Assembly: GCF_016432865.1 (NCBI RefSeq) | Contig: NC_067403.1 | Location: 255,998,001 to 256,062,000, forward strand | Reading direction: 5' to 3' | From: Antechinus flavipes | Lineage: Eukaryota | Length of the DNA stretch: 64,000 nt | In this document: positions 1 to 64,000 of the stretch, piece by piece | How positions within the stretch are numbered: the first letter of the stretch is position 1 | Layout: the number at the start of each line of letters is the position of its first letter | Notes under the pieces: generated by a model | Told to the model about the DNA's origin: nothing | The model's input: the letters and a program-made list of their open reading frames with translations, nothing else | The model's database searches: none | Position numbers and translations under genes: made by a program

Positions 1-3000
1 ATAAACTCAAATATTTTATATATAGTCAATCTTTGAAAGTGTTACTTCCACAGATTTCTTTAAATTAAAAAAAAGTTTGATTTTTAGAGTTTTATCCTGT
101 ATTTTGCTGAGGCCATTATAATCTAGATTAGTTTCTCTTTTGTGTTTTGAAAATATGGTGTATATTATTCATGGGCCACACTAAAGTCTCATCTAGGCTT
201 TGATTTGTCCCAGTATCAGAATCTAGATACCATAAACGCTCAGAATTATTGGAATTGGATTCCAGGAGATGACCCTAAGGACCGACTACCCCTTTGGAAT
301 ACTAAAGTCCACTTAGGGCTCTAGAATTCTATATATCGTTTCTGTACCTGTGTGTCTGTTTGTCTCAATAATGTAGTTCAAAGCCTTCTCTTCCCCTTCC
401 CCTCAGTAATCTGACGCCCTTTACAGCCCCAGCCACCTGAACTATGATAGGTCTCCCATATGCTGAGTTTTTCTCCCCTGAAAATTCTACTCTTTTCTTC
501 CTGGAGCTTTGTATGAATTCCAGCAGCCCCCCCACCCAATCCCTCCAGAGCTCCCCCACACAATGAACTTCCCTCCTGGACTGCTCCCCATCACTTGTAT
601 TTTCTCAGATGTTGTATATTGATTTTTTTTTTTAATTTCAGTTTCATTTTTGACAAACTAGACTGCAGAAATTCTCTGAGATGGTGACTTTAAGTATAAC
701 ACCAGAGCAGTGATTCTTTGGGGCAGTTTTTTATCTTAGGTGCTGACCTCGGCCATGTGCACTGTTTCCTTGTCTGAGTCTCTTTTCTAAATGGTAACTA
801 TAAATACTGTGTAAGTATATGTATGTGCACGTATGTGGATCAACGGCCAAATACTTCTGTGCAGATATTCTTATTTTAGTCACAAATCCTTCAGAAATGA
901 TAATTGTTCTGTGTCCAAGTATTTCTATCGTCGTTACCTCAAGACAATTTGAGGTGACGGTTGTAGGAGTCTTGAGTTACAGCCCTACCTAAGCCAGAAG
1001 TTCAAAGCCAATTTGGGGTTTCTATCCTGCTCTAAGTACAATAGACCAACTGTCACTAAACTACTCAATTCCTGCTAGGACTGTCCTCAGGTGGAAAGGG
1101 GGGCCTTCCAGTGATCAGTATCCTAATACTTGCCACGTGGATGAAAGGCCACTGGACTTGGATCAGGGAATAAGGAATGCTCCTAATTCCAAGGCACATT
1201 TTTGTTCTGTTTGTCTCTTTATTCACAGTTGTTCATTTTTCACATCCTTTTGTGAAGAGAGAAGGTCTGTGCAAGGTCTTAAATCAGAGTAATAATATTT
1301 CTTATTGTTTTTCCATTGAAACAGAAAGATTTTATGATTTGTATGCATCCAGTGACCGTATAGAAATGTTGATTTTATTTTTGTATTTACTTTACATTCC
1401 ATTTTCTAAAACTACTTATTGTTATAATTATACTCGAATAACCCCTTGGTTCTAGTCCCATGGCCATGGCCCATGATGGTAGCAACTAGATCTAAGCTGT
1501 CCCCCTTAACCTTCCTAAGCTCTCAGTGCAGAGTTCTGCAAGTAGATGGTTGATGATTGTTGTTTTTAAATGGAATGCCCCGTGGAAAAGGTAGCGTCCT
1601 GGTGTGCTGGGATAGTACTAACTAGGCTTTGTTTGGTTTGTGACTTCGGTGGTCATTTTAAGTTTTATTTCAGTGCTGATTTCAGATATTCCATATAAAT
1701 CCATTAAGTGCAATTTAATCAAACATATGTGTACATTATGCTTCATGGAGACTATTAGAGCCGTGCCGTGTAATATCAGAGAACTAGTATTACGCTTGTC
1801 TGAAGTGATCCTGTTCTTCCTAGAATTGCTCTGCATACAAGAGGAAAGCATCCAGTTACTGCTAAAAATGCAGGAGCCCTTTTTCTCTGCTCATTTTATG
1901 GATATTTGTTTCTTGAACCATATTCAGAAGCTCACATACCTTCCTGCTGCCCAGCAACCTTTCTCCCGAGACTTTGTACAACCAGATTCTTACCTCCCGT
2001 GTATTTTCCACAAAAGTTTAGAAATGTTTGGTGTCTCCCTGCAGCCCTCCCACTTCCTACCATCCAGGGGGTAGTGACCTTTCTCAGACCTCAAGTGGCA
2101 ACCCTTGATTTATAGCACCCTGATAGAATGGATGCTTGGTAATTTTAGGATAAAAGAAATTATACAAAATTTCAAACTCCACAAGACCTATTCATGTTAT
2201 GTTTTCATGACTTGAAGTAGTAGTAATGATTGTTTCCTGAACATTTCTGTGTCTTTGAGTGTTTCCTTTTATGTATTGTCAATATGACTTCGTTTATATT
2301 TCCCCCTTTTTTCCCAAGCAGCTTTTTTCCTGTTATGGGCCAGAACTCTACTTGAAGTCTGTCTTAGTCCCAGAACTTGTGCTCCAGCCTCCAGCTACTG
2401 TCTTCCTCCAGTCTATCTCCAAGCCCTTAATACCTTGTAAGAATCCTTGTTTCAGAGTTCTGGCCCATCCTACAATTCAAATATTATTCAAATGTTTAAG
2501 CTGTGCAGTCATTCTTTGCTTGTGGGACATGGGGATTGCTAGGGTTTTACTGTTTTGAATAATCTTGTTCCTACCAATGGATTTGCTTCAAGCACAGCAC
2601 TAATGGAGTCGGAAGCATTGGCAGTGCTGCCGAACTTTATTGAAGGGCATCATATTGTATTGAGATCATACTGATTTCTTACTGCCACTATGGCAGCACA
2701 TCGTGGCCATTTTGCCACAGCACAAACGGCAATTGAATATCGTCTTCCACAATATTGGCCAATTTGGCTTCACTGTATTATGCCAGTTTTTCTAGTTTGC
2801 TTTTCTCTTAGTTGTATTTCTTTTAAAAGCCATCCGAGTATATCCTAATCTTTTGGGAAAATGATCATTACTTATAGAGATTTTATACTTATATATAATA
2901 CATTTTAATATTTTGATTAATGGATTTTAGTTTTTCCCCCAAGAGTACCTCCTCCCCGGCCCTATATATTTGCTTGCCTTTTTCCCTTTGTTTTATAATT

Positions 3001-3057
3001 TGTCAGTATAGTACCTCCTTTACATGCCTAAAATGCATTTTTGTTCAATTCACTACT

Positions 3058-3446
3058 TGTTAGGGTCCCGAGCGTGGTATTCACGGCAAAAGCAGGTCTC
3101 CTTCCTCCGCACTCTAAGTCCGTCCTCTGCGGACTCAGCTTCGGGCGTCCCCGGATCCCTCGAAAGGGAAATGACTAGACAGGGAGCCGGAGTTAATGCA
3201 GCTTTTTATTCAAGGAGTAGCAAAAGAAAATGTTCCCCCTACAAGTCTGTGCTTCTTTTATCCCTCTAGGCTTCTCTTCCGGTATTTTGGTGGTCCCTCC
3301 TAGATCCTCCCCGAAGGTGGAGCTATGTTCCTCTTGTGCCTTCCCAGTGCCCTCGGTCTCTGCCTACGTGGCAGTTCTGGGTGGGCGGGTTCAGACATGG
3401 AACCGCTCACTTCCCATCCAGGAGGTCTATTCTGGAGCCCCTCACA
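3058..3446 (-). mobile_element. ERV solo LTR (389 bp, 6-bp TSD, ERV2-like)
   Basis: TG(3058)...CA(3446) termini; perfect TSD ACTACT at 3052-3057 and 3447-3452; minus-strand AATAAA (tttatt 3205-3210) and TATA-like GGGATAAAAG near 3256-3264; GC-richer than flanks. Confidence 0.85.
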
Positions 3447-5926
3447 ACTACTCAAATAGTGCAAGATTTCCTTTCACTCTTAATTCTTAATGATTTTATA
3501 ACTACATTTATATTACCTCTGTATTTGCAATATATCTGGCTAAATGATGTCAAAGTTTATTTTATTTTTCCCTTTGAAATAGAATTTTCCTTCTGTCCTA
3601 GCCTTTAGCTTTTGTATTTTATTAAGTTGTATATTGTATAAATAGAGTTTGTTGATCTTTTCTAACATCTAATATTAGATTTTGGAGTTACATATAAATC
3701 CATCTCCCTACTTTCATATAAGTAGCTTTTAAAATTTGTCACAAAAGTTTTTATTTAATCCTATAAAGTACTGATCTTGAGACATTGTGTAACACCAAAA
3801 ATCAATAAAATAGGTCAATTTTAATCATTTTTAGGGTATTGACTGAATCTAACTGTATCCGAATTCTCCAATTTCCTTATTCCTCAAAAAAAATCTTTTA
3901 TCATTGACTTAAGATATGTTTAATGAGGTCATCAGTCAGATATGATTGAAAAATAATAAAAGGGTATTTAGGATGACTATCTAAGTGTTCTGTTGATGCA
4001 ATGTGGTTCAGCTTAGCAATATGTTAAGCAATGTTTAGCTAATTGGTTTCTCTTTCCTCATCTGACATAGCAGTAAGTCCTAAGTCCTCAGTTCTTTACA
4101 ACTAAGTAAAAGGAATCACATTTACATTAGGTAGATTAAAAACAAAAAAAATTTAATTTTAACAAAGTATTGAAAAAATTGCTCTTGTTTTATATAACAC
4201 CTCCCCCTAAGAAACCAAGAACTTTTTGCTATCTTGGATGGTGTGCTGTGACTTCCATAATTATATTCAGTGTGAATATGCAGGTGTGTATAAATAGATA
4301 TTTCTAGCGCAGCTTTCTTCACGTTTCCTTCTTTCCTTGAGTCATTTCATTCAGCACGATCATGTGTCACTTATTTCCAGATTTACCCTTGTCCCCCATG
4401 AACCTTTCCTTGGAATCAATTAGAAAGCTCCTTAGAAGGAAGAAGTTCTTGTATCGAGTTGCATTTTTCTGATGTATATGTAAGTTTCCAATACATTTGG
4501 CAAAGATATTCTCTTTTACCCTGTTTCGTTTCTTGATTATTTTTACTCTGCTGCCTATAACGTGTCTTGGTTGAATACTTCAGAATTGTGTAGCAAAGTT
4601 AACTACAACATTCCTTTATCTCCTAATACTTATTATTTGGATTATTGAAATCATTGGAATTTCTGGCATAATGTAGAATATCCCTTCCTCGGTGTTTTCC
4701 ATGATCTTGGTTTTATCTAATATTAGTCTATCTGTTTGGTTCTGCGTTTCTGATTTATTTGATATCAGATACTTTGAAAAACATTTAAGGACACGTTATC
4801 AATGATTGATTTTCACTAAATTCTGTGAAAGTGCAAGACAGAAATCCTTTAAATGGATCTTTAAACTTTTCTTAGTTGCAGGGGGTTTTATTTAAGAAGT
4901 AGACATTAACAAGGTAATGGCATCATGCTCTTTTCCATGCCTTTCCGGTGTGGTTTGCTATTTATATTATATACTTGTTGCCAACCATACCCAACAGTTG
5001 AACAGATGGAGTGTTTCTGATTTTTCTAAGAATATTTTTGTACCAGGGAGAGCAAATGTGGACCTTTCAGAGCCAGACTGAAAATAGGGCTTCCTGGCAC
5101 TAAGGACAGGAGTCTCATCTGTTCCTCCTTGATTTCCCCTCAATATGGAAGCTATGAACAAGTTTATTTGAGTTTTGTCATATTCAAAAAAATGCCCTTG
5201 TTTATCTCGAGTCCTTCCAATTAGGGATTGCAAATATTTTAACTAAAGTCTTTGCCCTCTAAAATGTATAAGATAACATCCTGGTGCTTAAGTTACATTC
5301 TTCTTGCTAGAGGTTGAAAATTTTCATGTGGATTTTGATTTGTTTTCTCTTGGGAACTGCTTGTTCCCATTTGTCTCTTGTGTTGGTAGCTCATAATATC
5401 ACCATAAGCTTCAATGTCAGAATTATATCCAAAAACATTGATAAAGATTTTCCCTTAAATTCTTGGTTTTCTTGTACCTATTGAGGACACTAAGACACTT
5501 TGTAATCATTGTGGTAGTGGTATGATATTTAATTCTTAGCTTTTAAAAAAAATTGTATTTGCTATACTTTTTCACATGGTCTGTTTTTATTTAATATTTC
5601 TTCTCCTCAGTATTTGTGATCCTGGAGTAGTTATACATTTGATTCTAGCTCAAAATAACCTGTTCACATCAATGTCTTTTTCTGATTCATAACTAGCTCC
5701 AGATAGTTTTAGAAATGTTGCCATGCAAATACCTCTTTTTCCTTCCCATAATTTTCTTTGTTCTTCTGCAAATTCATTTTTACTTATTATTTTGAAATAG
5801 CCTATTGGTGGTATATAAGTAATACAATAGCAAACGAGTAGGTTTAATATATTAGCTCCATCTAGCCAAGCACATTGAATCTCTCAAGTTATTAGATCTT
5901 TGCTCTTTTTCTAAAATACATAAATA

Positions 5927-6042
5927 GAAGCAGCTAAATTGTACAGTGGATAGAGTTCCTCCTGGAATTAGAAGGACGTGAGCTCAAATTCCACCTCAGG
6001 CACTTTACATCCCATTTGGATCAAGAATTAAAAAAAAAAAAA
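5927..6042 (+). mobile_element. diverged tRNA-derived SINE (WSINE1/Mar-like)
   Basis: gcagctaaattgtacagtggatagag...gagctcaaattccacctcag...poly(A); resembles the intact copies at 13147 and 16774. Confidence 0.65.
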
Positions 6043-7924
6043 ACTGAAGTAGTATTAAATATTTATATTTAATCTTAATCTTAAGTAAATGCTTAAAATA
6101 CTTATACTTAAATATTAAAATAATTTTGTGATAGGTCTAATTACATCTTGGTGTATAAATGTATTTGCTAGATGGTCATTATCACCATTTAAATTTATTT
6201 TTTGTCTTTTGTGGCTTTATTTTAAGTATGAAAATTTGGGAGTGATTTATCTTGGTTTTAATTTTTTTTAAGTTGCATTTCTTGGTAATATGTTTCAGTG
6301 AAGCCATTTGCTTTTGTATCTTATCTTGTAACTTATTCCCTTCCCCTCCCATAATATGCCCTTTAAGATCCCTTACCCCGTCTTTGTTGTAATCAGCCCT
6401 TCCTCCTCCTTGCCAAGTGGATGCTTCCCATCCCTTCTCATCTCATCATGCTTAGATAATAAACCTGTCCATTTCCGTGGTCTCTCTATATTTGTCATTT
6501 TGTGTGGGACAATTGGATCCCTGAAGATCCATATAGGCTGACTTTTTTGCCCCCCCTGGTGGGCAGACACATGAGTTGTTCAGAGCTAAGAATATTAGGT
6601 AAAAAGGTTTCCTCGTTGATTGGTTACATTTTTAGTTCTAATCAATTGATGTGACATTGTCTTGAATAGAGATTGTGGCTGTCCACAGAAGTATTTGCTA
6701 CAAAGATTCCACTTTATGCCCCCATCTGTGGTTCATTTTGTTGTACTGTTAAATAATTATCTATTTGGATACCAAGAATTTTTTACCTCTTGGATATTAT
6801 AGTTCATTTTCTATTTCTTTATGATGCTTTAAATCTTTATTGACATAATTGGAATTGTGATGTGTGAGATGTGAATCTAAAACAGCATGACTAGAGTAAA
6901 ATTTAATTTTCTGGTTATTAAAAATTAATATCTCCCTAATATATTAACACTTCAGGTTAATCAGGCTGTTGTCTATCGTGCACACTTTGGTTTTGACCTA
7001 TTAAGCGAAATTATATACAGATTATTGCTTTTTTTATAGAGTATATTTTGATTTCCTTATATAAATCCTCCTTCCAAACACCGTCTTCCAATTTTCTTTG
7101 ATACTAGCCCTATGTTTTCTTCTAATTATTAAGTAATGAATTGATATTAAGGAACTGGGGTTATATTGGCATCTTGGCTGTAATTTATTGGTTTTTCTTC
7201 AACTTATTTGTACAAAAAATGTTTGTAATTTTTTAGGCTGTATGTCTTAATCGGTGAATACTTTTCCTCACTGCTCTGCTCTGACCATATTCTCAATGTC
7301 ACCAAGACTAGGGATGCAGCAGTTTTTGCCTGTAATTTCCTCCCCAAAAGACCACCCCTCATAGAGACGGCAGAATCCAGCAAACACTGGGCCCCGGGCC
7401 ACACCCCCAGATGTGTTGTAAGCATGTGACCTCTGACCCAAGGTGAGTGGTGGGTTTCATCTCGGTTTTCCATGCCGCGGCTCAGGATGCCGTCGGGTTT
7501 TCTTGGGCGCCACTGGTAAACGGTTCTTGGTTTGCGGGATCTCCGCTGTATCAGTTCCTACAAGTTTCCAGATATTTCTTGCAGGCCAATAATCTAATCA
7601 TAGACCCAAAGTGCTTAGTGTACTTGTTGGACACTAGAAAGGTTTTTGTACGTATGGTCCTTTTCCGCTTTTGTAACCTTTGCCCATCTGATGGACATAA
7701 AATAGAAACAAGTTGTTTTCATTTGCCTTTCTTGAAATATTAGTGATTTAGAGCATTTGTATGATTTTTTTGATGACCTGGCTACACGGTCATATGCTTG
7801 GATCACTTTTAATAGGGCTTTCAACCTAGTGCAAAATTCTCTTAGATCTAAATTATATATAAATACATACACACACGTATGTATGCACAGATACAGAAAT
7901 ATAGTTATTTTCTGTTTTTTAAAA

Positions 7925-8830
7925 AAAAAGTATCTTGGAAATGAGACCTTTATCAGAGAAGCTTAAGTGTTTTTGGTTTTTTCCATTAACCTATTCCCTC
8001 TGGCATTACTATATTACATTTGTTTGTGCAAAAACCTTCAACAATTTGATCCCAGTTGTTCCTTGGATGAGCTGTTTCATGTTCTGTTTATCCCAGACTT
8101 TCCTCTACCCCTAGATCTGAAAGGCAGAAATTTCCCTTTCCTCTGATTTGTCTGGCTCGTGTATCCCTCTGAGGAGGGATTTTGTGTGCGGTTTGCCCTG
8201 ACTTTCCTTCTCCCGCTGTTGGCTGCTGTGACCCTTGGACCAGAACTTCCCCAGACCCAACCCTGCTGCTGTATGGGGTAGGTCTGTCCTGCAGGCTCCA
8301 GCCTGGGCCGGCCTCTGTACTGTTCCCTCTGGGAGGTAAGACCGTGTTAACTTGTCCTAACCCCTTCTGTTCACATCTTTGATCCTTGAGTTGTTGGCCA
8401 CGGCCCATTGATACCTGTAGCTGTTGCTTCTGTGTCTTGGGTTTTATCGGCCGTTCGTTTGGATGAGGACTTCCAGCCTCGCCGCCATTTTGAATGGTCC
8501 GTGCTATTCTGACTCGGATCGTGGTTCCCTCATATTGAGCTCGTGTGGGACCTTCGGAGCGTGTGGTGTGAACTGCTGCTCCCACCCTGTTTTTCCCACA
8601 AATTGTTTTCCACGGTTTTGTGGACTTGGAATTGTTCTCCCAGCTTCCTGTGGCCCGGTGGCCTGGTAGCAGCTACTTCTGATAATTGCTTTGTAATGTA
8701 GCTTGAGATCTAACAGAAGCAAACCCCTGCATTCCCATTTGTTCATGATTGTCCTTGACCTTTTGTTCCTCCAAATGAAATCTGTCTCATTGTCTAGAGT
8801 GACCCCTTTAGAGAGTGTTATTTCACCTAA
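7925..8830 (-). mobile_element. old fragmented LINE-1 ORF2 remnant
   Basis: Minus-strand translation near 8690-8790, DFIWRNKRSRTIM...GLLLLDLKLHYKAII, resembles the L1 ORF2 motif KFIW..KR.RI......GG..LPD.KLYYKA; gagacctttatcagaga at ~7943 is also L1-antisense-like. Boundaries approximate and the middle may be unrelated sequence. Confidence 0.6.
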
Positions 8831-10149
8831 AATCTCCCAGACCTGCCCTGTTCTCCAAGGAAAATCCCTCCCTGCATCCAGGCCCCAAGCCTCTGGCTGT
8901 CCGAGCTTCCTAGACCCCCAGGGGCCTCCCTCTTCCTCCTCCTTTCCTGTAACAATCACTGTCCCTCCCATGAGCCCTCTCCCTCCCCCCCAATGGTGAC
9001 GGCCTCTTTGGTGACTGGGGGATGGTGGCTGTCTGAATCCCTCGGCTTTCTCAGTGCCCCCAACCCTTGACTCCAGCCCCTCACCCACTTGGAAAGTCTT
9101 CCCTCCCGGACTCCCGGGTCTTTGGGAAGGAGGCCGGGGAAGCCGGCCATGGACCGTGATATCAAGGGAGTGAGATGGGCCAAAGCTGGCCACTCCATGT
9201 GCAAGCAGATGGGAGACCCTCCTCCATCCTCTGGAAGCGAGCGAGCAGGAGCCACAGGGAAGCAGTGAGTGAGTGAGTGCCACAGGACGTGGGCCTGGGG
9301 GGAGGGGGCACGCCTGTGGATGACCTTGGAGGCAGCGGGGAGAAGCCCACGTTCAAATCCTGCTCTGTGACTTGTTGTGGGACCTTGGACGGGTCTCTCC
9401 ATCACCTTTTGTGTAAAGAGAGGAAGCTGGCTGTGGCCCCACGAGGGCTCCATCAGGAAGGTGGCTGCTGGGAGCAGGACGTTCTTGGTTGCTCAGTCTC
9501 CTTGGCTGGATTTTTTACCCCGTGGTCTTGGGCAGATGATGGGATAATGGAAGATGGGAGGAAGATGGCCAGCTGGGCTGGTGGCGGCTGCCATCCACAG
9601 AGACCCACTGTGTGATGTAGTGGGGGAAAGCATGGCTGTCAGGAGGGGGCGAGGGGTCTCTGCCATAAGGAAGGTGTGCTCAAAACCCCAAAAGGCTGAG
9701 AAGCTCTTGTCCTAGGACATCTGTGGAGGAGCTAGGGCAACGTCCAGGAGAGACCCAGGGGAAGGGGCAGAAGGAAGGTCAGCCCCAGGGGTTCCCCTCC
9801 CTCCATTCCCTTCCTTCCTAGGGTTCAGCAAGATTAAATGGAAAAAGAGGAGCAGCTCAAGGCAGGCTTGGTAAGATTTCCTTGGGGGCCTTCGAGTGGG
9901 AGGGATGGAGCAGCCAAGAGCCACGTCTGTGGGGAGGGGGGCGCCGGCCAAGGGCAAGGCCGGGCTCTGGTGGGCACTAACTTTACTCCTCTAGCAGCTC
10001 TGGAGGCCAGGCAGGAAGTCTCCTTTGTCCTCGGCTTGTCTTGTGAATGACCGCACTAGAACCATCTCGTCAGCAAAGAGCCAGCCCTGGGGAGCAGGAC
10101 GAGGGGGAGCAGTGGAGAGAAGTTACGGAAGGGACAGATGAGAACAGGC

Positions 10150-10960
10150 TTGGAGAGGAGGAAGGAAGAAGAGGGAATGGAGAGATGGAGAAGAGGGAAA
10201 GGAGAGTTGGAGAGATGGAGAAGAGGGAAAGGAGAGTTGGAGAGATGGAGAAGAGGGAAAGGAGAGAAGGAGAGAGAGAGAAGAGGGAAAGGAGAGATAG
10301 AGAGATGGAGAGTTGAAGAGGGAAAGGAGAGATAGAGAGATGGAGAGTTGAAGAGGGAAAGGAGAGATAGAGAGATGGAGAGTTGAAGAGGGAAAGGAGA
10401 GATGGAGAGATGGAGAGATGGAGAGTTGAAGAGGGAAAGGAGAGGAGAGAGAGAGAAGAGGGAAAGGAGAGGAGAGAGAGAAGATGGAGAAGAGGGAAAG
10501 GAGAGGAGAGAGAGAAGATGGAGAAGAGGGAAAGGAGAGGAGAGAGAGAAGATGGAGAAGAGGGAAAGGAGAGAAGAGAGAAGATGGAGAAGAGGGAAAG
10601 GAGAGAAGGAGAGATAGAGAAGAGGAAAGGAGAGAAGGAGAGAGAGAAGATGGAGAAGAGGGAAAGGAGAGAAGGAGAGATGGAGAAGAGGGAAAGGAGA
10701 GAAGGAGAGATGGAGAAGAGGGAAAGGAGAGAAGGAGAGTTGGAGAAGAGGGAAAGGAGAGTTGGAGAAGAGGGAAAGGAGAGATGGAGAAGAGGGAAAG
10801 AGAGATGGAGAGTTGAAGAGGGAATGGAGAGTTGGAGAAGAGGGAAAGGAGAGAAAGAGAGATGGAGAGTTGAAGAGGGAAAGGAGAGAAGGAGAGATAG
10901 AGAAGAGGGAAAGGAGAGATGGAGAGGTGGAAATGGAGGGGAGAGGAGGGAAAAGTCAGA
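10150..10960 (+). repeat. cytosine-free GA-rich tandem array (core GAAGAGGGAAAGGAGA, more than 20 copies, 20-35 nt period)
   Basis: Read directly: no C between about 10150 and 10956; recurring units such as GGAGAAGAGGGAAAGGAGAGATGGAGA and GTTGAAGAGGGAAAGGAGAGA. Confidence 0.95.
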
Positions 10961-11203
10961 TGGAACGAGGAGAGGAGGAAGGATCTTGGAGAGAAGATAA
11001 GTCAGGAGAGCAGGGGAAGCTCAGATGGACAGAAGAGAAAGGGAGAGGAAGGATCTTGGAGAAAAGAGGGAAGGTCAGTTGGAGAGAAGGGGAGATGAGG
11101 AGTCAGCAAAGGGAGGGCCAGAGCCTGTTCCTGGAGGCTGAAGGGGAAGGAGGCTCCTCCTCCCTGGCAGTTCTGGGGGACAATGGGGGGCAGCCCCGTC
11201 CGC

Positions 11204-11293
11204 GGGTGTTTCTTTTCCTGAGGCCGCCTGGCAGCCTCAGGTTTTGCTTTTCACCCTTAAAATGTGTGAGAGAGAAGGTGCCAAAAAGCAAAA
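11204..11293 (+). other. 3'-terminal RNA triple helix (ENE plus A-rich tract) of NEAT1_2
   Basis: Outer stem GGGTG(11204-08)/CACCC(11252-56); U-rich 1 TTTCTTTT(11209-16); inner stem CCTGAGGC(11217-24)/GCCTCAGG(11234-41); U-rich 2 TTTTGCTTTT(11242-51), perfectly complementary to AAAAGCAAAA(11284-93). Confidence 0.95.
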
Positions 11294-11346
11294 GGCACTG
11301 GTGGTGGCACGCCCAGTGGGCCGGGGTTCGAGTCCCCGCGGTGCCT
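11294..11346 (+). ncRNA. menRNA-like tRNA-mimic small RNA (RNase P/RNase Z substrate)
   Basis: Acceptor GGCACTG(11294-300)/CGGTGCC(11339-45); D-arm GTG-GTGG-CAC(11301-10); short arm GCCC-AGT-GGGC(11311-21); T-arm CGGGG-TTCGAGT-CCCCG(11322-38); begins exactly after the A-tract. Confidence 0.95.
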
Positions 11347-11649
11347 CTGCTGCTACTGGCTCCCTTCTCTCCCGTGAGGACTCCAGCTGGGGAGGGTCTG
11401 GGTTCCAGGATTGGGGAGGGGGCCAAAGTTGCTTCTCTTGGTTGTTCTGGGCCCTGAACGGGGCACCTGGCAGTGGGCAGGCCCGAGTCACAGAATCTGA
11501 GCCGGGCTGAGCTCAGACCATCAGGTTCCCTATATACCAGCCATAAGGACAAAAAGGAAAAGTCCCCACCTTCAAGGGGCTTGTATTTTGATGGGGGCAC
11601 TTACATGTGGGCATACAGTAGGTGACAAAAACAGCCCTTGGAGTTTTGC

Positions 11650-17385: not shown

Positions 17386-18141
17386 ATTCAAGTTCTGTGG
17401 ATATTTATCTCGATATAATTTTTAAAAACCCTGCGGCTGAGCCAGGAGCAGCCCTCAAACCCAGGACTTTGCCAATTCTGGGAGGCAGGAAATACAAAAG
17501 TTCCCATTTTATAAATGAAGAAACTGAGTCTCAGGAGGTCAGCAGGTCCTCTGGGGATGTGTCAAGAATCACACAGCTAGCCGAGGCCTCCAAGCTATTC
17601 TTTCCCATAAGCTACCCTGCCTCTGAGACTGAATGAGCATTTATGTTTGACCGTATGTATGCATTTGAGGGCGAATGAGCACATTTACCTTCCAAGGCAC
17701 TGCGTTTCAGGTTGGGCCTAAAAACAAAGAAAAAGGGCATTCTGGCTCCCCAGGGTATTCACCCCCAAGGGCTGACAGAGAGGGGGATGGGGAGATGCTT
17801 GATGGGCAAAAGCAGCGTGGGTGTGTCTGCTTCCATGTGGGACAGCGAGCTTCCCTTTGACTCGACCACGAGGCCATCTCGAACTGGAGACAATCCAATG
17901 GGCCGCGCTGGGCATCCCAGAGAACTGGCTCAGGAATGCTGGGAAGCCAGGGTGAGCCCGCTGGATAGGCAGGAAGAAGAAAAAAGGCCGCCAGACCGAT
18001 GGGAACATCCAGACAGCAGGCACCCGCAGAGAGCTGGGCCCCAGGAACCACGGTTCCTTGAGGGCCAACTCCTGGGTCCCATTACATTGTTGTACCGAGC
18101 TCGGGCCACGAGGGGGTGCAATGGTTCGATCTTTATAGCCC

Positions 18142-18240
18142 CAGTGCCTGGCATTCAGTAGGTGATTAATAAAGGAATGAATTCACTATGCCGTCAAATG
18201 GACAAGCATTTATTAAGCACTTACTGGGTTCCAGGCACTG
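18142..18240. repeat. tail-to-tail inverted pair of LINE-2 3' ends
   Basis: Arm 1 CAGTGCCTGGCATTCAGTAGGTGATTAATAAA (18142-73) and arm 2 TTTATTAAGCACTTACTGGGTTCCAGGCACTG (18209-40); both match the L2 3' terminus, in opposite orientations. Confidence 0.8.
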
Positions 18241-18690
18241 TGCTTGTAAATGTTGAAGATATAAATAATGTACAAGCCAAAAAAAAAAAAAAAAAAGTGC
18301 CTGTCCTCAGGGAGCTTATATTCTAAGGGAGAAGACAAAACCGAAAAGGGACATGAAAGGGGGGGAAGAGGGGGAGGAAGGGAGGGTCCCGGATGTGCTG
18401 GGGAAGTAGAGGCTGAAGAGCGACTGGTCCATCTAATGGAAGGTCTGGGAGGGCCTCAGCTTCTCTCTGTGGCAAGAGGGCACCAGGACAGCAGGAGCCA
18501 CACGGGCTTTCCCCTTCTGGCGACTTCCAAACAGTCCCAAGGCGCTGAATTGCTGGGTTTGCACGGTTTGCTTTCTCCTCACTGGCCCAGGGTCCGAGCT
18601 AGGGAGTGTCAGAGGTCGGATTTGAACTCACCAACACAGGGAGTCCAGGGAGTCCTGGGCGTCCCGGGCGTCCCGGCCCAGCGGTACCAC

Positions 18691-19079: not shown

Positions 19080-19345
19080 GGCAGGGACAGCCGGGAAGGG
19101 GGGGGGGGGGGGGGGGGGGCCACGGGCAGGGACAGCCGGGGGGCCGCCACGGGCAGGGACAGCCGGGGGGCGCCACGGGCAGGGACGGGGGGGGCGCCAC
19201 GGGCAGGGACGGGGGGGGCGCCACGGGCAGGGACGGGGGGGGCGCCACGGGCAGGGACGGGGGGGGCGCCACGGGCAGGGACGGGGGGGGCGCCACGGGC
19301 AGGGACAGCCGGGGGGCCGCGGGCAGGGACAGCCAGCGGGGCCGC
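19080..19345 (+). repeat. 24-bp G-rich VNTR (GGGGGGGGCGCCACGGGCAGGGAC)
   Basis: Five exact 24-mers at 19187-19306, nine GGGCAGGGAC cores in total, plus a 22-nt G run at 19098-19119. Confidence 0.95.
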
Positions 19346-21956: not shown

Positions 21957-22576
21957 NNNNNNNNNNNNNNNNNNNNNNNNNNNNNNNNNNNNNNNNNNNN
22001 NNNNNNNNNNNNNNNNNNNNNNNNNNNNNNNNNNNNNNNNNNNNNNNNNNNNNNNNNNNNNNNNNNNNNNNNNNNNNNNNNNNNNNNNNNNNNNNNNNNN
22101 NNNNNNNNNNNNNNNNNNNNNNNNNNNNNNNNNNNNNNNNNNNNNNNNNNNNNNNNNNNNNNNNNNNNNNNNNNNNNNNNNNNNNNNNNNNNNNNNNNNN
22201 NNNNNNNNNNNNNNNNNNNNNNNNNNNNNNNNNNNNNNNNNNNNNNNNNNNNNNNNNNNNNNNNNNNNNNNNNNNNNNNNNNNNNNNNNNNNNNNNNNNN
22301 NNNNNNNNNNNNNNNNNNNNNNNNNNNNNNNNNNNNNNNNNNNNNNNNNNNNNNNNNNNNNNNNNNNNNNNNNNNNNNNNNNNNNNNNNNNNNNNNNNNN
22401 NNNNNNNNNNNNNNNNNNNNNNNNNNNNNNNNNNNNNNNNNNNNNNNNNNNNNNNNNNNNNNNNNNNNNNNNNNNNNNNNNNNNNNNNNNNNNNNNNNNN
22501 NNNNNNNNNNNNNNNNNNNNNNNNNNNNNNNNNNNNNNNNNNNNNNNNNNNNNNNNNNNNNNNNNNNNNNNNNNNN
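21957..22576. other. assembly gap (620 N)
   Basis: N run, followed by GA/GAAA low-complexity sequence at 22577-22720. Confidence 1.
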
Positions 22577-57239: not shown

Positions 57240-57330
57240 CTTGCCTAACAAAGGGGGCGGAGGGTTATGTGTTCTTGGCGGTGAGGCTGTCCGTGGTGTA
57301 TAAATACAGCTCCTCCCAACGCCCTCTCAG
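57240..57330 (+). promoter_or_regulatory. MALAT1 core promoter (GC box plus TATA)
   Basis: GGGGGCGGAG (57253-62) and TATAAATA (57299-306); resembles the human MALAT1 major-TSS context as I recall it (caaaggcggcggaagg...tataaatac). Confidence 0.75.
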
Positions 57331-60300
57331 GCAGACGGCAGGCAGAGCAGCTAGGCGCTAGACCAGGTAGGACGAGGGAGCTGCAAGGGAGGCCTTTTGA
57401 GGCATTTTAAGTCGGAAGTTGTTTACTGTTTTGAGGTAGGAGAGCTGAGGCTTGCGTAGGTGAAATGGCTTTTAGCTAGCTTTAATTCTTAATCTCAATT
57501 TGAGGCATTTTACGCTTTTATGTAATGAAAATTGTTTTAGGAAGCCAGATGGAGGTTATTGGTTTAAAAGACTATCGGAAGGAGGCAGATAGGAGAAATG
57601 AGCTAATTTTAAAAGGAGAAGGTTGAAGCCAGATCAGGAAAAATAATTGGAAAAAACTCCCAGGGAAGGAATCTTTTATCTCAATTTAAAGCCGAGACTT
57701 CTTTTGTGAAGGGCAAAATCGGCCATATTTGAGCTCATTTGGAATGGGAAGGAAATTGGAATTTGAGTGATTTGTATAAAATAGGCGCCAGTCTTAGGTC
57801 TAAGCAGCAAAGCGAGAGCCTTAGCGAATGTATTGAAGATGGGAAATTTCACAAAAAGATCAAACAGAAAACAATAGAAAATAGAAGAAAAGAGGGAGAG
57901 GAACAAAAACTTTTAAAATGGCAGCTTTAGAGAGAAGATAGCAAGACAGAACTTTTTCAGCATCTGAACGGCAGGAACAAGCAAAGAGAAAAAACAGGAA
58001 ACTACAGAAATAGATCCAAAATCAGCGAGGGAGAGGGGGAGGGAAAACTGCGAGAGAACGTTTAGAAGAAAAACGTAGGGAAGATAGCAAGAACAATTTG
58101 AAGAAAATTGAGAAATAAACAAGATTGAAAGAGGAAGATTTAGAAGTAAGGAAAAGATAGCAACATTTTGAAGAAGGAAAATAGGAACAATTAGAAGAAA
58201 GAAAATAGAAGTTAGAAAATTGAAGAATAGAAAATTAGAAAAATAGCAAGAGGTTTGAAGAAAAATAGGATTGAAAGAAATGGAACAATTTGAAGAAGGA
58301 AAATAGAAGTTAGAAAAGCAATTTGAAGAATAGAAAATAGAAAATAGCCGAAGAAGGAAGATAGGATTTAAAAAAATAGCAAGTGAACAATTTTGAAGAA
58401 TGAAAATAGAAGTTAGAAAAAAACAAGATTGAAGAGGATACTAGAAGTTAGAAAAAATAGCAAGAGGACAAATTGGAAGAACAAAATAGAACAAATTGGC
58501 ATTGAAAGAAAGAAAAAAAAACTTAGAATCAACTTAGGATGAGTAAAGAATTTGAGGACAGGCTACTAAATGAATTAGCAGAGCATTTTTGGAATGGTCA
58601 TTTTGACAGAAAAAAAACTAGAAAAATGGTAGCCATAGAATTTTCAAGAAAAACCCAATAGAAGAAATTCTAGGAAATTTGACAAGATAAAATTAGCTAA
58701 AGGAATAGGGAAAAAATAGAAAAACCACGGAAGAAAATAGTTAATTAGTCAAAAATAGGAAAATAGAAGAAAAGAAGACAAAAATGGAAGAAAATTAGGC
58801 AAAAATTAGCTTAGTAAATTAATCTTTTATTAGAGCCAAATTTGAAGATAGAAAAAATAGCTTAAAAAAGAGCTCTTTAGGAGGAACTAAAAATTGCACC
58901 CTCCTAAGCTAAATGTAGTTGGTAAATCAGGTTAAGATTGGAAGCTACAGAAGAGGAGGCAGCCAGCGTAGAAGAGGAGCGATTTAGGATTCCAGGAAGA
59001 GGGCACTCCCTCGGGCAAGGGCCCTTTGAAAGCTAGTTGACGTAGCTGCTGTTAGGGCCATGGACTTAATTTTAAAAGGCCAGCGTTTTTGAAGATGATT
59101 AAGCTAGAAACCTGCGTAGGGGCCACTAGCTATTTAAAGCTAACTTATTTTAAGATGATTAAATATGGGACTTTAAAAAAAAAAAAAAAGCCCTTGCCCA
59201 TTGGACTGAGCTATTTTGCAAGAGTAATTGAGGGAGTGCCCGGCGGCCGGAGCGGCCGCGAAGCCAGCTAGAAAGGAGAAGCGGCAGCGGCAGACAGGAC
59301 CAGGACCAGGACTCTGGACAGGGCCAGCCCGCGAGGACAGGAGGAAGGAGCAGAAGCAGCAGCCACAGCAGCAGCAGCAGCAGCCAGGCTGGTTGAAGCT
59401 AGGAAGGAGGCCCCCCCCACCCCCGCCCTGACAGGAGAGAGCAGCGTGCGCCCCCCCTAGGCGAGCCAGGACCTCAGAGCAGAGCAGAGAGCCGCGCGGC
59501 GGAGGACAGGAAGGCAGGGCCAAGGAGGGCGCAGCTAGCGCGGTGCCGAGACGCGGTCGGTGCAGCTGGGAGCCAGCGTGGCCACAGTAGGGCCCTTAGA
59601 GGCTGCGGCAGGGCCCTGAGCGAGCGGTGGTAAATCGGGAAGCTTTGGTTTGTTTCTCTGCTTGATAAGCCAGTAATGAATGCCTCTGAATGTGGGGACG
59701 GGGGGAGTACGGTGTGGCCTCGGTAGCTCAGGCACGGTACTCGGGCAGCCTAGCTGTGGATTTGTATGTAACGAGTTTCTCTCGGGGATGTCTGTCTGTT
59801 GGTCGGTTTTGGGGTGTTTGTAGGGTTTCTCTCTTTTCAGTGCCTCTGTCTTGTCTGAAGCTTTTGGGGGCAGTCTGCCAAGCTGGAGTGTTAACTGTCT
59901 GCCCAATTAGGATGCCTGCAGGTTTCCTTTCAAATAAGAATGAATGGTAGCTAGCCATTATTGCCATAATTTAAAAAACAAAGCAAATTGAGGGCAATCA
60001 ATCGAGTGAGCCTGAAGAGAGCTGGACACCCCTGCACCTTGTGAGGAAGTGTAAGCAACTGGATTGCAAGCAGTTAAGTTAATCTTTCAGCTTGGACAAA
60101 TTTTGAGTATTTTTATTTTATGCCTAAACTTCTTTTTCCTTCCCTCCCACCCCTCAAATTTTAATTTTCGTAGTAAGAATGTTTTAAACTGTTTTTTGGG
60201 GGTCTTTAAAACGGGTAGGAATTGGGGAGGGCAAAATTTTGTTCAGTTCTTTTCCCCCCAGGTGTTTTCTAGAGCGCAAGGTCAGATGACTCGAATAACA

Positions 60301-63300
60301 AAGAAAAGACGCCAGTATCAGGATAAACATCACAAACGAGGTTTTACAGTTTGTAGAAAAAAAAAACCTAAAAGCTTAAGTTAAGCTCTCAATTAAGGTG
60401 TGATGAAGCTGGGCAGCCCTTTGGAAAAGATGGCGGTAGTTATATTGTTTTTTTTCCAACGGACTTTAAAGATTTGCAGATAATGTACTTTTGGGGAGTA
60501 TTAAAGTTTTTTACTGAGTTTTTTGGGTGGGGGTAGATGACTATGAGCTTGTTTCTAAGACTTTCCCCCCCACAGATAACTAGTCAAAATGGGTAGAAGC
60601 ATTGATTGCACTGCAGTGCTGTTGGCAAGAAAAACGCCAGAGATGGCGCAGCTGGCTTTTTTACATTGGAAGAATTGGAAAATGCAGCATGTTGATAACA
60701 TTTCAGTCTTCTCCCTGGAGAGTCTCAGAAGAGCGATAGGCCATGAAGTGTTAAGGAGGTTCGGGGGCCCAAAAACAGTCTGGAGTGAGTCGTAGATGTT
60801 GGAATTGTGGCGGGCTTGGGGCTTGGGTAGGTAATTGTTTATATTTTCAGATTACTGAAAGCCAGAGTCTAATAACTTAGACTGAAAAAAAAAAGAAAAG
60901 CAATTTTCAGGAACTTCCAGAAAGTTGGCAAGTAATTCCCCAAATGTGGTAAATCGTCCATTTAAAAAGTTTGGCAATTGGGGAAAAAATACCTTTTAAG
61001 ACCTTTGGGTCCCTGGAAAAAGTTACAATTCAAGGAGAGAGGAGGAGGAGGAGGAGGAAGGAGGAGAGGTAAAAAGTTCCTAATTGAATCTTTTAAAGTG
61101 GCTGTTCCTAAAAAGTTAAGGAAAGGAAAAGGAAAAAGTGCAATCCATCCATTCATCCATCCATCCATTCCTAAAGTGAAAGGTAAAAAAAATTGGGGTT
61201 TTGAAGGGTTTGTGATGTTACTGTGCTTTTTTTGGCTGAGTGTGTGTGCGTGTGTGTGGGTGGTTTTTTTCTCTTGGCATTTTTTTCAGGTGCTTAATTA
61301 ATTAATAATAGAACTTCAGAGGAAAGGCATTGCTAATGATCCTGAGGGATTCCTTCTCATTCATGGTAGCTTTATATCAAGTAAGATTCTGTTTTCGGTT
61401 GTTAAACAAAGTCTCTTCTTAGTGGAGGAATAAATAAGATGCTTTTCTTTTTGTATGACTGCAACAAGATGTTAAGGTATGCTCTTTTAAGTTCTGTACA
61501 TTTTGAAATTCAAGTAAAAGTTTAAAAATGAATCTTTAACCAAAGTAATTGATTAAAAAAAGTAAGAACTCTATACTCTTTTGGTGAGCTTAAGCTCCAA
61601 ATGTGTTGTCTTTTCTTGTGCGTTTGCGGTGGGGAGGGGAAATCTTTTTTTTTTTTCTGTAGACTCTTTTCAGATAACTTCATCTGATTCATAACCAGCT
61701 TGGCAAAATGGCGGCCTAAATGGAGAGAGAGGGACCAAGCTCCTTGGTGAATGATAAGTAAAAGGCAGAAAAGATTCTAAAATAATCATACCTCATGGGA
61801 GGGAAAAATAACATGCCCTAATAACCTGAGAATGATGCTAACTCCTGGTCAACCACAGAGAATCCATTATCTATCTGCAAATGCAAAAAAAAAAAAAAAA
61901 AAAAAAAGGAAAAATTAAAAAGCGCTAAGCAAGGAAAAAGCTTGTCAATTTTTAAAAAGCTATATGGCTTGACAAATGAGAGAGATCAAAATGGCAAAAA
62001 TCTTTTAAGAACATTATTTATTTACAATGAAGAGAAATGTCACGTTGAAATGCTGCTTTTACAAAAGCAGAATAAGAAAAAAATGAGAGAATTTATTACT
62101 ACATACGAATCATACACGTATACTAAAAATTCCCGGCCTTAGAAGAAGCGAAATGATAATGCAAAGATGAGTGGGAAATGGAGTTGCACAGTTTGGATTT
62201 GAAAGGAGCCTGTGTGCTGTCTGTGTCCGTTTCGTTTGCCTCAGACAGGTGTCTCTGTTGAAGAGTTCATTTCATCTGGGAAGCAGAAAACAGCAGGCAT
62301 CTCTTAACAGATAAGTTTAATTTGCCTTAGCAGTTAATTGCATGTCAGGGATAATAAGTAAATGCTTTTTAAGTCATGTTTCAGGTCTGAGGCCTCTGTA
62401 AAGTAGCCCTTTTTCTGCAAAAATAACCAGTAGCTTTTCTGTTCTGTAGATGCTGCACTGGGGAGAACTCCCCCCTAATCTTTAGAAATAGATGAAATCT
62501 AGTTTTATTTTCTCTGCCAGAGTTGGCTTTTCTGAAGCTGGGATGGATCTGTGTTCCTCCCGGTAACTGCAGTTTAGCTAAAAATAGCAAATGTTCTTTA
62601 AGAGTAGGATTGTTATTTTTGTAAAGTCTCTAATAATTGCCTATTTAAGTAGAACTTTAATCGACTTTTGTAGGCTGTCTGTTTTGTGGTTGGTGTCGGG
62701 CAATCTTGGGGGGGGATTCTTCTCTAATCTTTCAGAACTCTGCGAACAAACTTTAATGGACAAGATCAGGATTGAGCTGAAGATGGAAATTGAACTTAAT
62801 ACAGGCAGGAAAGACTTAAAAAGAAACTTTTAAATCCACCCCTCGGCAATGTAGAGCTAAATGACCAGCACTAATAATCCAGGCACTTTGGGCAGTAGAG
62901 GCCCTCTAAATAAGGAGTAAAAAAACCAAAACAAAACCAAAAAAAACCTCTTAGACAGTTGGGACACATGTGCAGGTAATCGCTTAAATCATCCAGCAGC
63001 GGTAAGGGCTTCTATATCCAGAACAGGTGATTGTGGTGATTCGGCAGCAGCCAGGCTTGAAGATTTGAACTCAGGAAGAAAGCTCAGGCAGTTTGCACAC
63101 TCCCGAGAGACTGCATGCCGATGTGGAATGCTGACGCCATCTCATGTAGCCTGTTATTCTGGGGCCGGGGCATGTGGGGGGGGGGGGCTCTTTTTTGTTT
63201 CTAGACTTTTCCTTTGCAGAGAGGCTTCATTTCACCCTTCATGAAGCTGCTCAGGATTTGACATGCATAATAAGCAAGCGCTTGGCTCTGCTCTTCTAGT

Positions 63301-64000
63301 GTGTGAGTCCCCGCAGTGATGAGTAAATCCTTGGTCTCTTGGAAACTCTGCTCCTTTTGTTCTGAGGGAAAGGGCGGCTCAGGCCGGGCGGGGGGCTTAC
63401 TTGTTTTGTAGCTTTTCTTTTTACAGACTTCACCCAGAATGAATGCAGTGTCTTGACAGCAGGTCTGGTCTGTTGGCAAGTAATGGGCCGTGTGCTTGGT
63501 CTGCTGGGTGTAATAGAGCGCATTTTGAAGCGACTGGAGTATGAGTTATTAAAAATGGTTCCCAATGCTTGGAGTAGTGATTGTGGATGGAGAATCCAGC
63601 TGATGAGTGGTTATTTATTTAAAAAAAAACATGCTGAGTGTTGAAAGGAAATTTCTGCAGCTTTAAGCAGCCGTGTTTGTGATTTGAACCCCCTCAGTCT
63701 GGCAAGTTGTGCTTACTTCCTTTTGGTAAAGATGCTTTTTTTGTTCCCTTTTCTGTCGGGGCGGTGGGGGGGCACTGAAGCCTTTAGTCTTTTCCAGATG
63801 GAGTCATTAAAAAATCAGTTCAAGAAATTACATTGCAAACAAGCAGAAAATGTTGAAGACACTTAATGGCAAGTGAAAATCCAAAATTGCAGCAGTTCAG
63901 TAGCAGTGCATATTGTCCAAGTCTCTCTCTTTTTTCCCTCGCTTGTCTTAACTGTCATATGCAGGAACACACAAAACTCGCTTCTCCCTTGTGATGGGCC
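57329..64000 (+). ncRNA. MALAT1: MALAT1 (NEAT2) orthologue, 3' end beyond the window
   Basis: Collinear blocks I recognise from eutherian MALAT1: tcttgtctgaagctttt (59849), tatcaggataa (60316), aatgatcctga...atggtagcttt...tcaagtaagattct (61336-61390), cataaccagc...ctccttggtgaatgataagtaaaaggcagaaaagatt (61690-61776), gtttcgtttgcctcagacaggt (62229), ggcaatcttgggggggattcttctctaatctttcagaa (62699), agaggccctctaaataagga (62897), cccaatgcttggagtagtgattgt (63561), tgaagcctttagtcttttccagatg (63776). TSS estimated from the TATA box. Confidence 0.95.
57850..58900 (+). repeat. A/G-rich degenerate repeat domain within the MALAT1 5' region
   Basis: Recurring AACAATTTGAAGAA(G)GAAAATAGAAGTTAGAAAA-like units (e.g. 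~58285, ~58387) with strong purine bias. Confidence 0.8.

What the first reader, a model, noticed from the sequence alone, without database searches (positions are those of the whole stretch)
11204..11346. Complete poly(A)-independent 3'-end formation system: triple helix plus tRNA mimic (marsupial NEAT1/MEN-beta)
Seen: a U-rich internal loop closed by two stems, a genomically encoded AAAAAGCAAAA tract perfectly complementary to TTTTGCTTTT, and a cloverleaf starting at the very next base. Established for human/mouse MALAT1 and MEN-beta: RNase P cuts at the 5' edge of the tRNA-like fold, the upstream lncRNA is protected by a U-A.U triple helix instead of a poly(A) tail, and RNase Z plus the CCA-adding enzyme mature the small RNA. 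Prediction here: cleavage between 11293 and 11294, giving a non-polyadenylated nuclear lncRNA and a 53-nt RNA (56 with CCA). The mechanism is known in eutherians and NEAT1 has been reported in opossum, so the novelty is this species' instance, which the ORF track cannot show.
Basis: partly seen in the sequence, partly recalled or inferred. Interest (0 to 1): 0.9.

Follow-up and report, generated by a model that had tools for sequence, protein, structure and literature searches.

The report
Antechinus NEAT1 triple-helix and menRNA end

Summary
Window 11294-11345 (+) matches Rfam RF01684 (mascRNA-menRNA) at 68.5 bits (gathering 42.5, E 3e-12). Directly upstream lie U-rich motif 1 (11209-11216), an 8-bp hairpin (11217-11241), U-rich motif 2 (11242-11251), a 31-nt linker and the A-tract AAAAAGCAAAA (11283-11293).

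The NEAT1 and marsupial reading is also supported:
- All motif variants are NEAT1-type, not MALAT1-type.
- A TATA box (57299-57306) and a sub-threshold Rfam MALAT1 hit (62005-62094) lie downstream on the same strand.
- The 86-nt triple-helix string and the 61-nt tRNA-like string read letter for letter as those tabulated for Antechinus flavipes NEAT1 in the supplement of Mol Biol Evol 2025 (PMC12941219).
- That paper's NEAT1-to-MALAT1 spacing of 46,034 nt places the MALAT1 start 22-23 nt after the TATA box ends.

This species' instance is therefore already in print, so the finding is ordinary: score low. Cleavage, triplex formation and absence of poly(A) remain inferred for this species.

One small untested point remains. 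The acceptor stem here is nearly perfect (6 Watson-Crick pairs plus 1 G-U), so this menRNA may escape CCACCA tagging and be stable.

The parts
1..11293 (+). Last ~11.3 kb of the NEAT1 long isoform (NEAT1_2/MEN-beta) body. The transcription start is predicted about 21.2 kb upstream of the window.
   Evidence: Published A. flavipes NEAT1 length of 32,485 nt and its coordinates, mapped onto the window. Inferred; transcription was not tested.
11204..11208 (+). 5' strand of the ENE lower stem (GGGUG).
   Evidence: Complementary to CACCC 11252-11256. Conservation in other species could not be checked because the published strings start at motif 1.
11209..11216 (+). U-rich motif 1 (UUUCUUUU), the predicted Hoogsteen strand of the triple helix.
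   Evidence: Identical to the NEAT1-type motif in every tabulated NEAT1 row seen.
11217..11241 (+). Hairpin I: an 8-bp upper stem closing the U-rich loop, 25 nt in all.
   Evidence: Minimum-free-energy folds. The same 25-nt length is seen in all tabulated marsupials.
11242..11251 (+). U-rich motif 2 (UUUUGCUUUU), the Watson-Crick partner of the A-tract.
   Evidence: Exact reverse complement of 11284-11293. The pairing appears in the minimum-free-energy fold.
11252..11282 (+). 31-nt linker. Its first 5 nt (CACCC) form the 3' strand of the lower stem, or alternatively pair with GGUG 11277-11280 ('hairpin II').
   Evidence: the two alternatives are of similar energy (-22.5 against -24.3 kcal/mol, without counting triplex energy). 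The length is NEAT1-like.
11283..11293 (+). Genomically encoded A-rich tract AAAAAGCAAAA, the predicted mature 3' end of NEAT1_2 at A11293.
   Evidence: It abuts model position 1 of RF01684.
11294..11346 (+). menRNA-type tRNA-like fold (52 nt) plus the discriminator U11346. RNase P is predicted to cut 5' of G11294 and RNase Z after U11346.
   Evidence: RF01684 at 68.5 bits; cloverleaf minimum-free-energy fold. The D and T arms are identical to those of human menRNA, whose crystal structure is L-shaped. ARAGORN finds no true tRNA.
11347..11351 (+). 3' trailer (CUGCU) that can pair with AGCA of the A-tract in the precursor, extending the acceptor stem.
   Evidence: Minimum-free-energy fold of 11280-11356. 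The mechanism was shown for MALAT1 and predicted for MEN-beta in PMC8457004. The trailer is conserved in the tabulated marsupials.
57299..57306 (+). TATAAATA box of the downstream MALAT1 gene (synteny anchor).
   Evidence: The published spacing puts the MALAT1 start at 57327-57328, which is 22-23 nt after the box ends.
57328..64000 (+). 5' 6.7 kb of MALAT1. Its own triple helix and mascRNA are predicted at about 65.5 kb, outside the window.
   Evidence: RF01871 hit at 62005-62094, 50.6 bits, below the gathering score of 70, E 1.5e-4 in the 8-kb search. Coordinate arithmetic.

Best explanation
Window 11204-11351 (+) is the 3'-end maturation module of the NEAT1 long isoform (NEAT1_2/MEN-beta) of Antechinus flavipes or a near-identical dasyurid.

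Steps taken from eutherian work and inferred here:
1. Pol II reads through the module. The nascent RNA folds the tRNA-like cloverleaf 11294-11345, whose acceptor stem is extended by pairing of the A-tract with the trailer (AGCA 11287-11290 with UGCU 11348-11351).
2. RNase P recognises the acceptor/T-arm stack and the elbow formed by the D-loop GG and the T-loop. It cuts between A11293 and G11294.
3. The freed A-tract enters the U-rich internal loop.
 - Watson-Crick pairs form between A11284-A11293 and U11251-U11242.
 - Hoogsteen contacts come from motif 1: U11213-U11216 on A11290-A11293, C11212 (protonated) on G11288, and U11209-U11211 on A11285-A11287.
 - C11289-G11246 remains a doublet.
 - The result is 7 U.A-U triples plus 1 C+.G-C triple, with the 3' end blunt against the upper stem. 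This shields the RNA from 3' exonucleases without a poly(A) tail.
4. RNase Z cuts after U11346 and the CCA-adding enzyme tails the 53-nt RNA.

Shown here: the presence of the sequence, the fit to the covariance model, the complementarities, the synteny and the identity to a published orthologue.
For: - RF01684 hit at 68.5 bits against a gathering score of 42.5.
- Motif layout and exact complementarity.
- The arrangement is unique in the window and absent from 100 shuffles.
- Folding recovers hairpin I, the motif 2:A-tract duplex, the cloverleaf and the leader-trailer extension.
- Both published strings for A. flavipes NEAT1 read identically to the window: four substrings matched by the tool, the remainder compared by eye.
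- The published NEAT1-to-MALAT1 spacing lands 22-23 nt downstream of a TATA box.
- An RF01871 MALAT1 hit lies downstream on the same strand.
- Literature on the mechanism: PMC12941219, PMC8457004, PMC11693755.
Against: - No expression or 3'-end data for this species could be examined, so cleavage, triplex formation and lack of poly(A) are all inferred.
- Folding-energy z-scores are only about -1.
- The lower stem competes with an alternative 'hairpin II' pairing of similar energy, and its conservation could not be checked.
- The RF01871 hit is below its gathering score.
Confidence: 0.93

Rival explanations
1. It is the 3' end of MALAT1, not of NEAT1.
For: RF01684 covers both mascRNA and menRNA. 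The two modules are homologous.
Against: - The tabulated A. flavipes MALAT1 module differs throughout: TTTTTCTTTT, 13 A's before GCAAAA, and a tRNA-like fold starting GATAC.
- MALAT1-specific sequence and a TATA box lie 46-51 kb downstream.
- The predicted MALAT1 3' end falls outside the window.
Confidence: 0.01
2. It is a dispersed or duplicated MALAT1-like triple-helix/tRNA-like element, of the kind described in lizards and fish, and is not attached to a NEAT1 transcript.
For: Such dispersed copies exist in some vertebrates (Zhang et al. 2017, as cited in PMC10869381).
Against: - The position is syntenic, upstream of MALAT1 on the same strand.
- The sequence is identical to the element that ends the annotated 32.5-kb NEAT1 of A. 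flavipes.
- There is only one such element in the window.
Confidence: 0.02
3. The module is conserved in sequence but is little or never used in this species: the long isoform is rare, or ends are made elsewhere.
For: There are no expression data here. In eutherians NEAT1_2 is cell-type restricted (abstract listed).
Against: - The triplex-forming motifs show no mismatches across 545 mammals.
- There is only one substitution between two Antechinus species over 147 nt, and it keeps a pair (G-C to G-U).
- Paraspeckles and NEAT1 are reported in opossum (Cornelis 2016, as cited).
Confidence: 0.04

Closest known systems
Antechinus flavipes NEAT1 3' end as tabulated in PMC12941219 (GCA_016432865.2, CM028222.1:255976810-256009294, plus strand)
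   Same: The 86-nt triple-helix string and the 61-nt tRNA-like string read identically. The distance to MALAT1 and the strand are the same.
   Different: Nothing detectable. Dasyurid species not in that table could share the same 147 nt, so the species call is 'A. flavipes or very near'. A. stuartii differs by one C-to-T change in the 3' acceptor strand (window 11339).
Human/mouse NEAT1_2 (MEN-beta) ENE+A triple helix with menRNA
   Same: - Identical triplex-forming motifs (TTTCTTTT, TTTTGCTTTT, AAAAAGCAAAA).
- The A-tract abuts the tRNA-like 5' end.
- The D arm (GUGGUGGCAC) and T arm (CGGGGUUCGAGUCCCCG) are identical to those of human menRNA.
   Different: - Hairpin I is 25 nt, against a NEAT1 mean of 28.7.
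- The anticodon-like arm is 11 nt, against 17 nt in human, giving a 53-nt rather than a 59-nt RNA.
- The acceptor stem has 6 Watson-Crick pairs and 1 G-U, against three G-U pairs at positions 1, 2 and 4 in human (by inspection).
MALAT1 ENE+A triple helix with mascRNA
   Same: Same architecture, the same processing enzymes and the same leader-trailer principle.
   Different: - MALAT1 has two more U's in motif 1, one more in motif 2 and a longer A-tract, giving 9 U.A-U triples against 7 predicted here.
- Its linker is shorter.
- mascRNA starts GAU and carries a longer anticodon-like stem.
Monodelphis domestica NEAT1 3' end (opossum reference)
   Same: Same motifs, the same CC after motif 1, the same 25-nt hairpin I length, and identical acceptor stem and trailer.
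   Different: Substitutions in the hairpin loop, the linker, and the D and anticodon-like arms.

Membership tests
NEAT1/MEN-beta 3'-end module (ENE+A triple helix plus menRNA) | tRNA-like fold matching the mascRNA-menRNA covariance model above its curated threshold | tested here: met
   RF01684 at 68.5 bits against a gathering score of 42.5, full length, E 3.2e-12.
NEAT1/MEN-beta 3'-end module (ENE+A triple helix plus menRNA) | U-rich internal loop (motifs 1 and 2) flanked by stems, and an A-rich tract with an internal GC that fixes the register | tested here: met
   Motifs at 11209-11216, 11242-11251 and 11283-11293. Upper stem of 8 bp and lower stem of 5 bp. Exact complementarity over 10 nt. 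The motifs are those reported with no mismatches across mammals.
NEAT1/MEN-beta 3'-end module (ENE+A triple helix plus menRNA) | A-tract ends exactly at the 5' edge of the tRNA-like fold (the RNase P site) | tested here: met
   A11293 is followed by G11294, which is model position 1.
NEAT1/MEN-beta 3'-end module (ENE+A triple helix plus menRNA) | NEAT1-type rather than MALAT1-type sequence variants | tested here: met
   TTTCTTTT, A5GCA4, a GGC start and a 31-nt linker, compared with the tabulated NEAT1 and MALAT1 rows.
NEAT1/MEN-beta 3'-end module (ENE+A triple helix plus menRNA) | Synteny: upstream of MALAT1 on the same strand | tested here: met
   RF01871 hit at 62005-62094 (+), below threshold at 50.6 of 70 bits. 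TATA box at 57299. The spacing equals the published 46,034 nt.
NEAT1/MEN-beta 3'-end module (ENE+A triple helix plus menRNA) | Leader-trailer complementarity extending the acceptor stem in the precursor | tested here: met
   AGCA 11287-11290 pairs with UGCU 11348-11351, and A11293 with U11346, in the minimum-free-energy fold. The principle comes from PMC8457004. The pairing is weaker than in MALAT1, with a 2x1 internal loop.
NEAT1/MEN-beta 3'-end module (ENE+A triple helix plus menRNA) | RNase P cleavage, a non-polyadenylated 3' end and triplex formation in vivo | not testable with these tools
NEAT1/MEN-beta 3'-end module (ENE+A triple helix plus menRNA) | Belongs to a long (>20 kb) paraspeckle-scaffolding transcript with an upstream short polyadenylated isoform | not testable with these tools
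   The published start and the NEAT1_1 poly(A) sites lie about 21 kb and about 18 kb upstream of the window.
MALAT1 3'-end module | TTTTTCTTTT / TTTTGCTTTTT / A(7-13)GCAAAA motifs and a mascRNA starting GAU | tested here: not met
   The window carries the shorter NEAT1 variants and a GGC start.
Canonical tRNA gene | Cloverleaf with a 7-nt anticodon loop and normal D arm, detectable by a tRNA finder | tested here: not met
   ARAGORN finds no tRNA in the window. The anticodon-like arm is a 4-bp stem with a 3-nt loop.

The most novel reading that the evidence does not exclude
In A. flavipes (and Monodelphis, which has the same acceptor stem) the menRNA may receive a single CCA rather than CCACCA and accumulate as a stable small RNA like mascRNA. 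The CCACCA degradation tag is reported to need both a 5' GG and an unstable acceptor stem. Here the GG is kept, but the stem is 6 Watson-Crick pairs plus 1 G-U. Human menRNA has three G-U pairs. Among the tabulated rows, koala has one mismatch and echidna two. If true, the instability of menRNA is lineage-specific rather than a fixed property of NEAT1.
Probability: 0.3. Interest if true: 0.35.

Novelty: already known. Interest (0 to 1): 0.12.

Why it matters
The mechanism itself is textbook lncRNA biology: a poly(A)-independent 3' end made by RNase P and capped by a triple helix. It is shared only by NEAT1 and MALAT1.

This instance adds nothing new. NEAT1 has been functionally shown in opossum. 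Its 3' module has been catalogued in 545 mammals, including this species, with coordinates and sequence (PMC12941219).

Its practical value is as a precise annotation anchor. It gives the NEAT1_2 end at 11293 and the MALAT1 start near 57328, in a genome where ORF-based annotation sees nothing.

It also yields one small testable question: whether menRNA is stable in species with a well-paired acceptor stem.

Tried and rejected
- ARAGORN on the whole window found no tRNA. The fold is a mimic, not a tRNA gene.
- A permissive Rfam scan found no NEAT1_1/2/3 conserved-region hits in 1-11293 and no second mascRNA-menRNA hit. This is consistent with poor NEAT1 body conservation and with the MALAT1 3' end lying beyond the window. 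It is not evidence against NEAT1.
- Folding-energy z-scores were uninformative, at about -1.
- The primary papers could not be read: Wilusz 2011 (PMID 22076379 / PMC3273417), Brown 2012 (PMC3511071) and Cornelis 2016 (PMC5014006) are not held. The CCACCA rule and the opossum data are therefore cited second-hand from PMC10275265 and PMC12941219.
- I did not build an alignment or covariation test from the supplementary-table sequences. That would have required pasting many sequences by hand, so comparisons with other marsupials were made by inspection.
- I did not send human sequences to any tool.
- The MALAT1 and dispersed-copy readings were considered and rejected (see rivals).

Full report
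**1. Observation**

The stretch 11204-11346 reads as follows:
- GGGUG (11204-11208)
- UUUCUUUU (motif 1, 11209-11216)
- a 25-nt hairpin whose stem is CCUGAGGC/GCCUCAGG (11217-11241)
- UUUUGCUUUU (motif 2, 11242-11251)
- CACCC (11252-11256), complementary to 11204-11208
- a linker running to 11282
- AAAAAGCAAAA (11283-11293)
- a cloverleaf (11294-11345) followed by U11346

The last ten bases of the A-tract are the exact reverse complement of motif 2. The motif 2 ... A-tract arrangement occurs once in the window and in none of 100 shuffles.

A gathering-threshold Rfam scan of the whole window gives a single hit. It is RF01684 mascRNA-menRNA at 11294-11345 (+), 68.5 bits against 42.5, E 3.2e-12, over the full model length. 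The minimum-free-energy fold of 11294-11346 is the same cloverleaf. The fold of 11204-11293 recovers hairpin I and the motif 2:A-tract duplex. ARAGORN finds no true tRNA.

**2. Which gene and which organism**

A permissive Rfam scan adds a sub-threshold MALAT1 (RF01871) hit at 62005-62094 on the same strand. It scores 50.6 bits against a gathering score of 70, E 1.5e-4 in an 8-kb search, and contains a 23-nt perfectly conserved core.

The literature search found a 2025 Mol Biol Evol survey of NEAT1 and MALAT1 in 545 mammals (PMC12941219). [quoted passage not shown] Four substrings of the window were searched in that table:
- 22 nt of the linker: found in Antechinus flavipes and A. stuartii only.
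- 29 nt of the 5' part of the tRNA-like fold: found in the same two rows only.
- 33 nt spanning motif 1 and hairpin I: found in the same two rows only.
- 31 nt of the 3' part of the tRNA-like fold plus trailer: three occurrences, two of them shown (A. flavipes and Monodelphis). The printed A. stuartii string does not contain it.

Only the A. flavipes NEAT1 row carries all four. Read, the full 86-nt and 61-nt published strings are identical to window 11209-11294 and 11294-11354. A. stuartii differs by one C-to-T change (window 11339), which turns the G7-C pair of the acceptor stem into G-U.

The A. flavipes MALAT1 strings in the same row are clearly different: TTTTTCTTTT, 13 A's before GCAAAA, and a tRNA-like fold starting GATAC. 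The element is therefore NEAT1-type.

The published coordinates are NEAT1 CM028222.1:255976810-256009294 and MALAT1 256055328-256063536, both on the plus strand. They give a spacing of 46,034 nt. Anchoring the NEAT1 end at 11293/11294 has these consequences:
- The MALAT1 start falls at 57327/57328, which is 22-23 nt after the end of the TATAAATA box at 57299-57306.
- The MALAT1 end falls at about 65,535, outside the window. This explains the absence of a second RF01684 hit.
- The NEAT1 start falls about 21.2 kb upstream of the window.
- With the 11294 anchor, the window starts at 255,998,001.

I conclude that the window is A. flavipes, or a dasyurid indistinguishable over this module, and that 1-11293 is the distal part of NEAT1_2.

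**3. Anatomy and likely mechanism**

Established from eutherian work:
- RNase P cuts at the 5' edge of the tRNA-like fold.
- The freed A-tract forms a triple helix with the U-rich loop.
- RNase Z and the CCA-adding enzyme finish the small RNA.
- RNase P and RNase Z recognise the elbow built by the T-loop and two D-loop guanosines.
- In MALAT1, pairing between the A-tract and the 3' trailer promotes cleavage. The same was predicted for MEN-beta.

Seen in the window:
- The D arm (GUGGUGGCAC) and T arm (CGGGGUUCGAGUCCCCG) are identical to those of human menRNA. Its crystal structure (8K1E) is L-shaped.
- The trailer can pair with the A-tract: UGCU 11348-11351 with AGCA 11287-11290, and U11346 with A11293.

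Inferred triplex register, following the MALAT1 layout of two stacks of U.A-U triples separated by a C+.G-C triple and a C-G doublet:
- U11213-U11216 on A11290-A11293 paired with U11245-U11242
- the doublet C11289-G11246
- C11212 on G11288-C11247
- U11209-U11211 on A11285-A11287 paired with U11250-U11248
- A11284-U11251 as Watson-Crick only
- A11283 free

That makes 7 U.A-U triples plus 1 C+.G-C triple, against 9 U.A-U in MALAT1. The 3' end is blunt against the upper stem.

One ambiguity remains. CACC(C) 11252-11256 can close the ENE lower stem with 11204-11208, or it can form 'hairpin II' with GGUG 11277-11280. The energies are similar. The GGUG is not conserved in the other marsupial rows, which mildly favours the lower stem. 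The upstream flank of other species was not available to test this.

**4. Differences from the eutherian module**

- Hairpin I is 25 nt in all tabulated marsupials, against a NEAT1 mean of 28.7.
- The anticodon-like arm is 11 nt, against 17 nt in human, giving a 53-nt RNA instead of 59 nt. The survey already calls this arm highly variable.
- The acceptor stem is G-C, G-C, C-G, A-U, C-G, U-G, G-C. Human has G-U at positions 1, 2 and 4. Among the tabulated rows, koala has one mismatch and echidna two.

CCACCA tagging is reported to need a 5' GG together with an unstable acceptor stem. This menRNA may therefore receive a single CCA and be stable. That is an inference, and it is the only untested idea of any novelty here.

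**5. Novelty and verdict**

The mechanism is known. NEAT1 in marsupials is known: opossum functionally, and koala and others computationally. This exact instance is tabulated in a 2025 paper. The finding is correct and well read by the first stage, but it is already known. Processing in this species remains inferred. Interest is low.

Other notes of this scan on the same window agree with what I found independently: the menRNA acceptor stem (s1-183216), MALAT1 at 57329-64000 (s1-183248) and the GA array (s1-183247).

Noticed in passing
window 10150-11067: Purine-only tandem array inside NEAT1, ending about 140 nt before the ENE. TRF reports a 30-nt period, about 24 copies and 83% matches. Positions 10150-10960 hold 395 G, 361 A, 54 T and a single C. 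GC skew is +0.52 for 10-12 kb. It is possibly a protein-binding or triplex-prone GA block of the NEAT1 3' domain.
   Followed up: partly
window 18125-18260: Very stable 136-nt hairpin (-53.9 kcal/mol, z = -6.7). It hits several miRNA families (mir-1271, mir-325, mir-493 and others) on both strands, far below their thresholds. From memory, the arms look like the conserved core of MIR-type SINEs, so this is probably two inverted SINE copies rather than a curated miRNA. Not verified against a repeat library.
   Followed up: partly
window 19080-19330: G-rich minisatellite with a 24-nt unit (GGGGGGGGCGCCACGGGCAGGGAC), about 9 copies at 92% matches. It sits in a 77% G+C block about 8 kb downstream of the NEAT1 end. 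CpG observed/expected is only about 0.6. It has G-quadruplex potential; function unknown.
   Followed up: no
window 21957-22576: A run of 620 N's (assembly gap or mask) in the NEAT1-MALAT1 intergenic region. The published spacing still matches, so the gap is counted the same way in the published coordinates.
   Followed up: no
window 11217 (compared with the table in PMC12941219): The first base after motif 1 is C in Antechinus, Monodelphis, echidna and the tabulated eutherian NEAT1 rows seen. It is A (TTTCTTTTAC) in all tabulated diprotodonts and in Dromiciops. That change replaces the stem pair next to the triplex (C11217-G11241 here) with an A/G mismatch. It is a lineage marker within Australidelphia that the paper's 'no mismatches' statement does not cover.
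   Followed up: partly
window 57299-57340: A canonical TATAAATA box lies 22-23 nt before the published MALAT1 start position. This agrees with the TATA-to-start distance of 25-35 bp described for avian MALAT1 in PMC10869381.
   Followed up: partly
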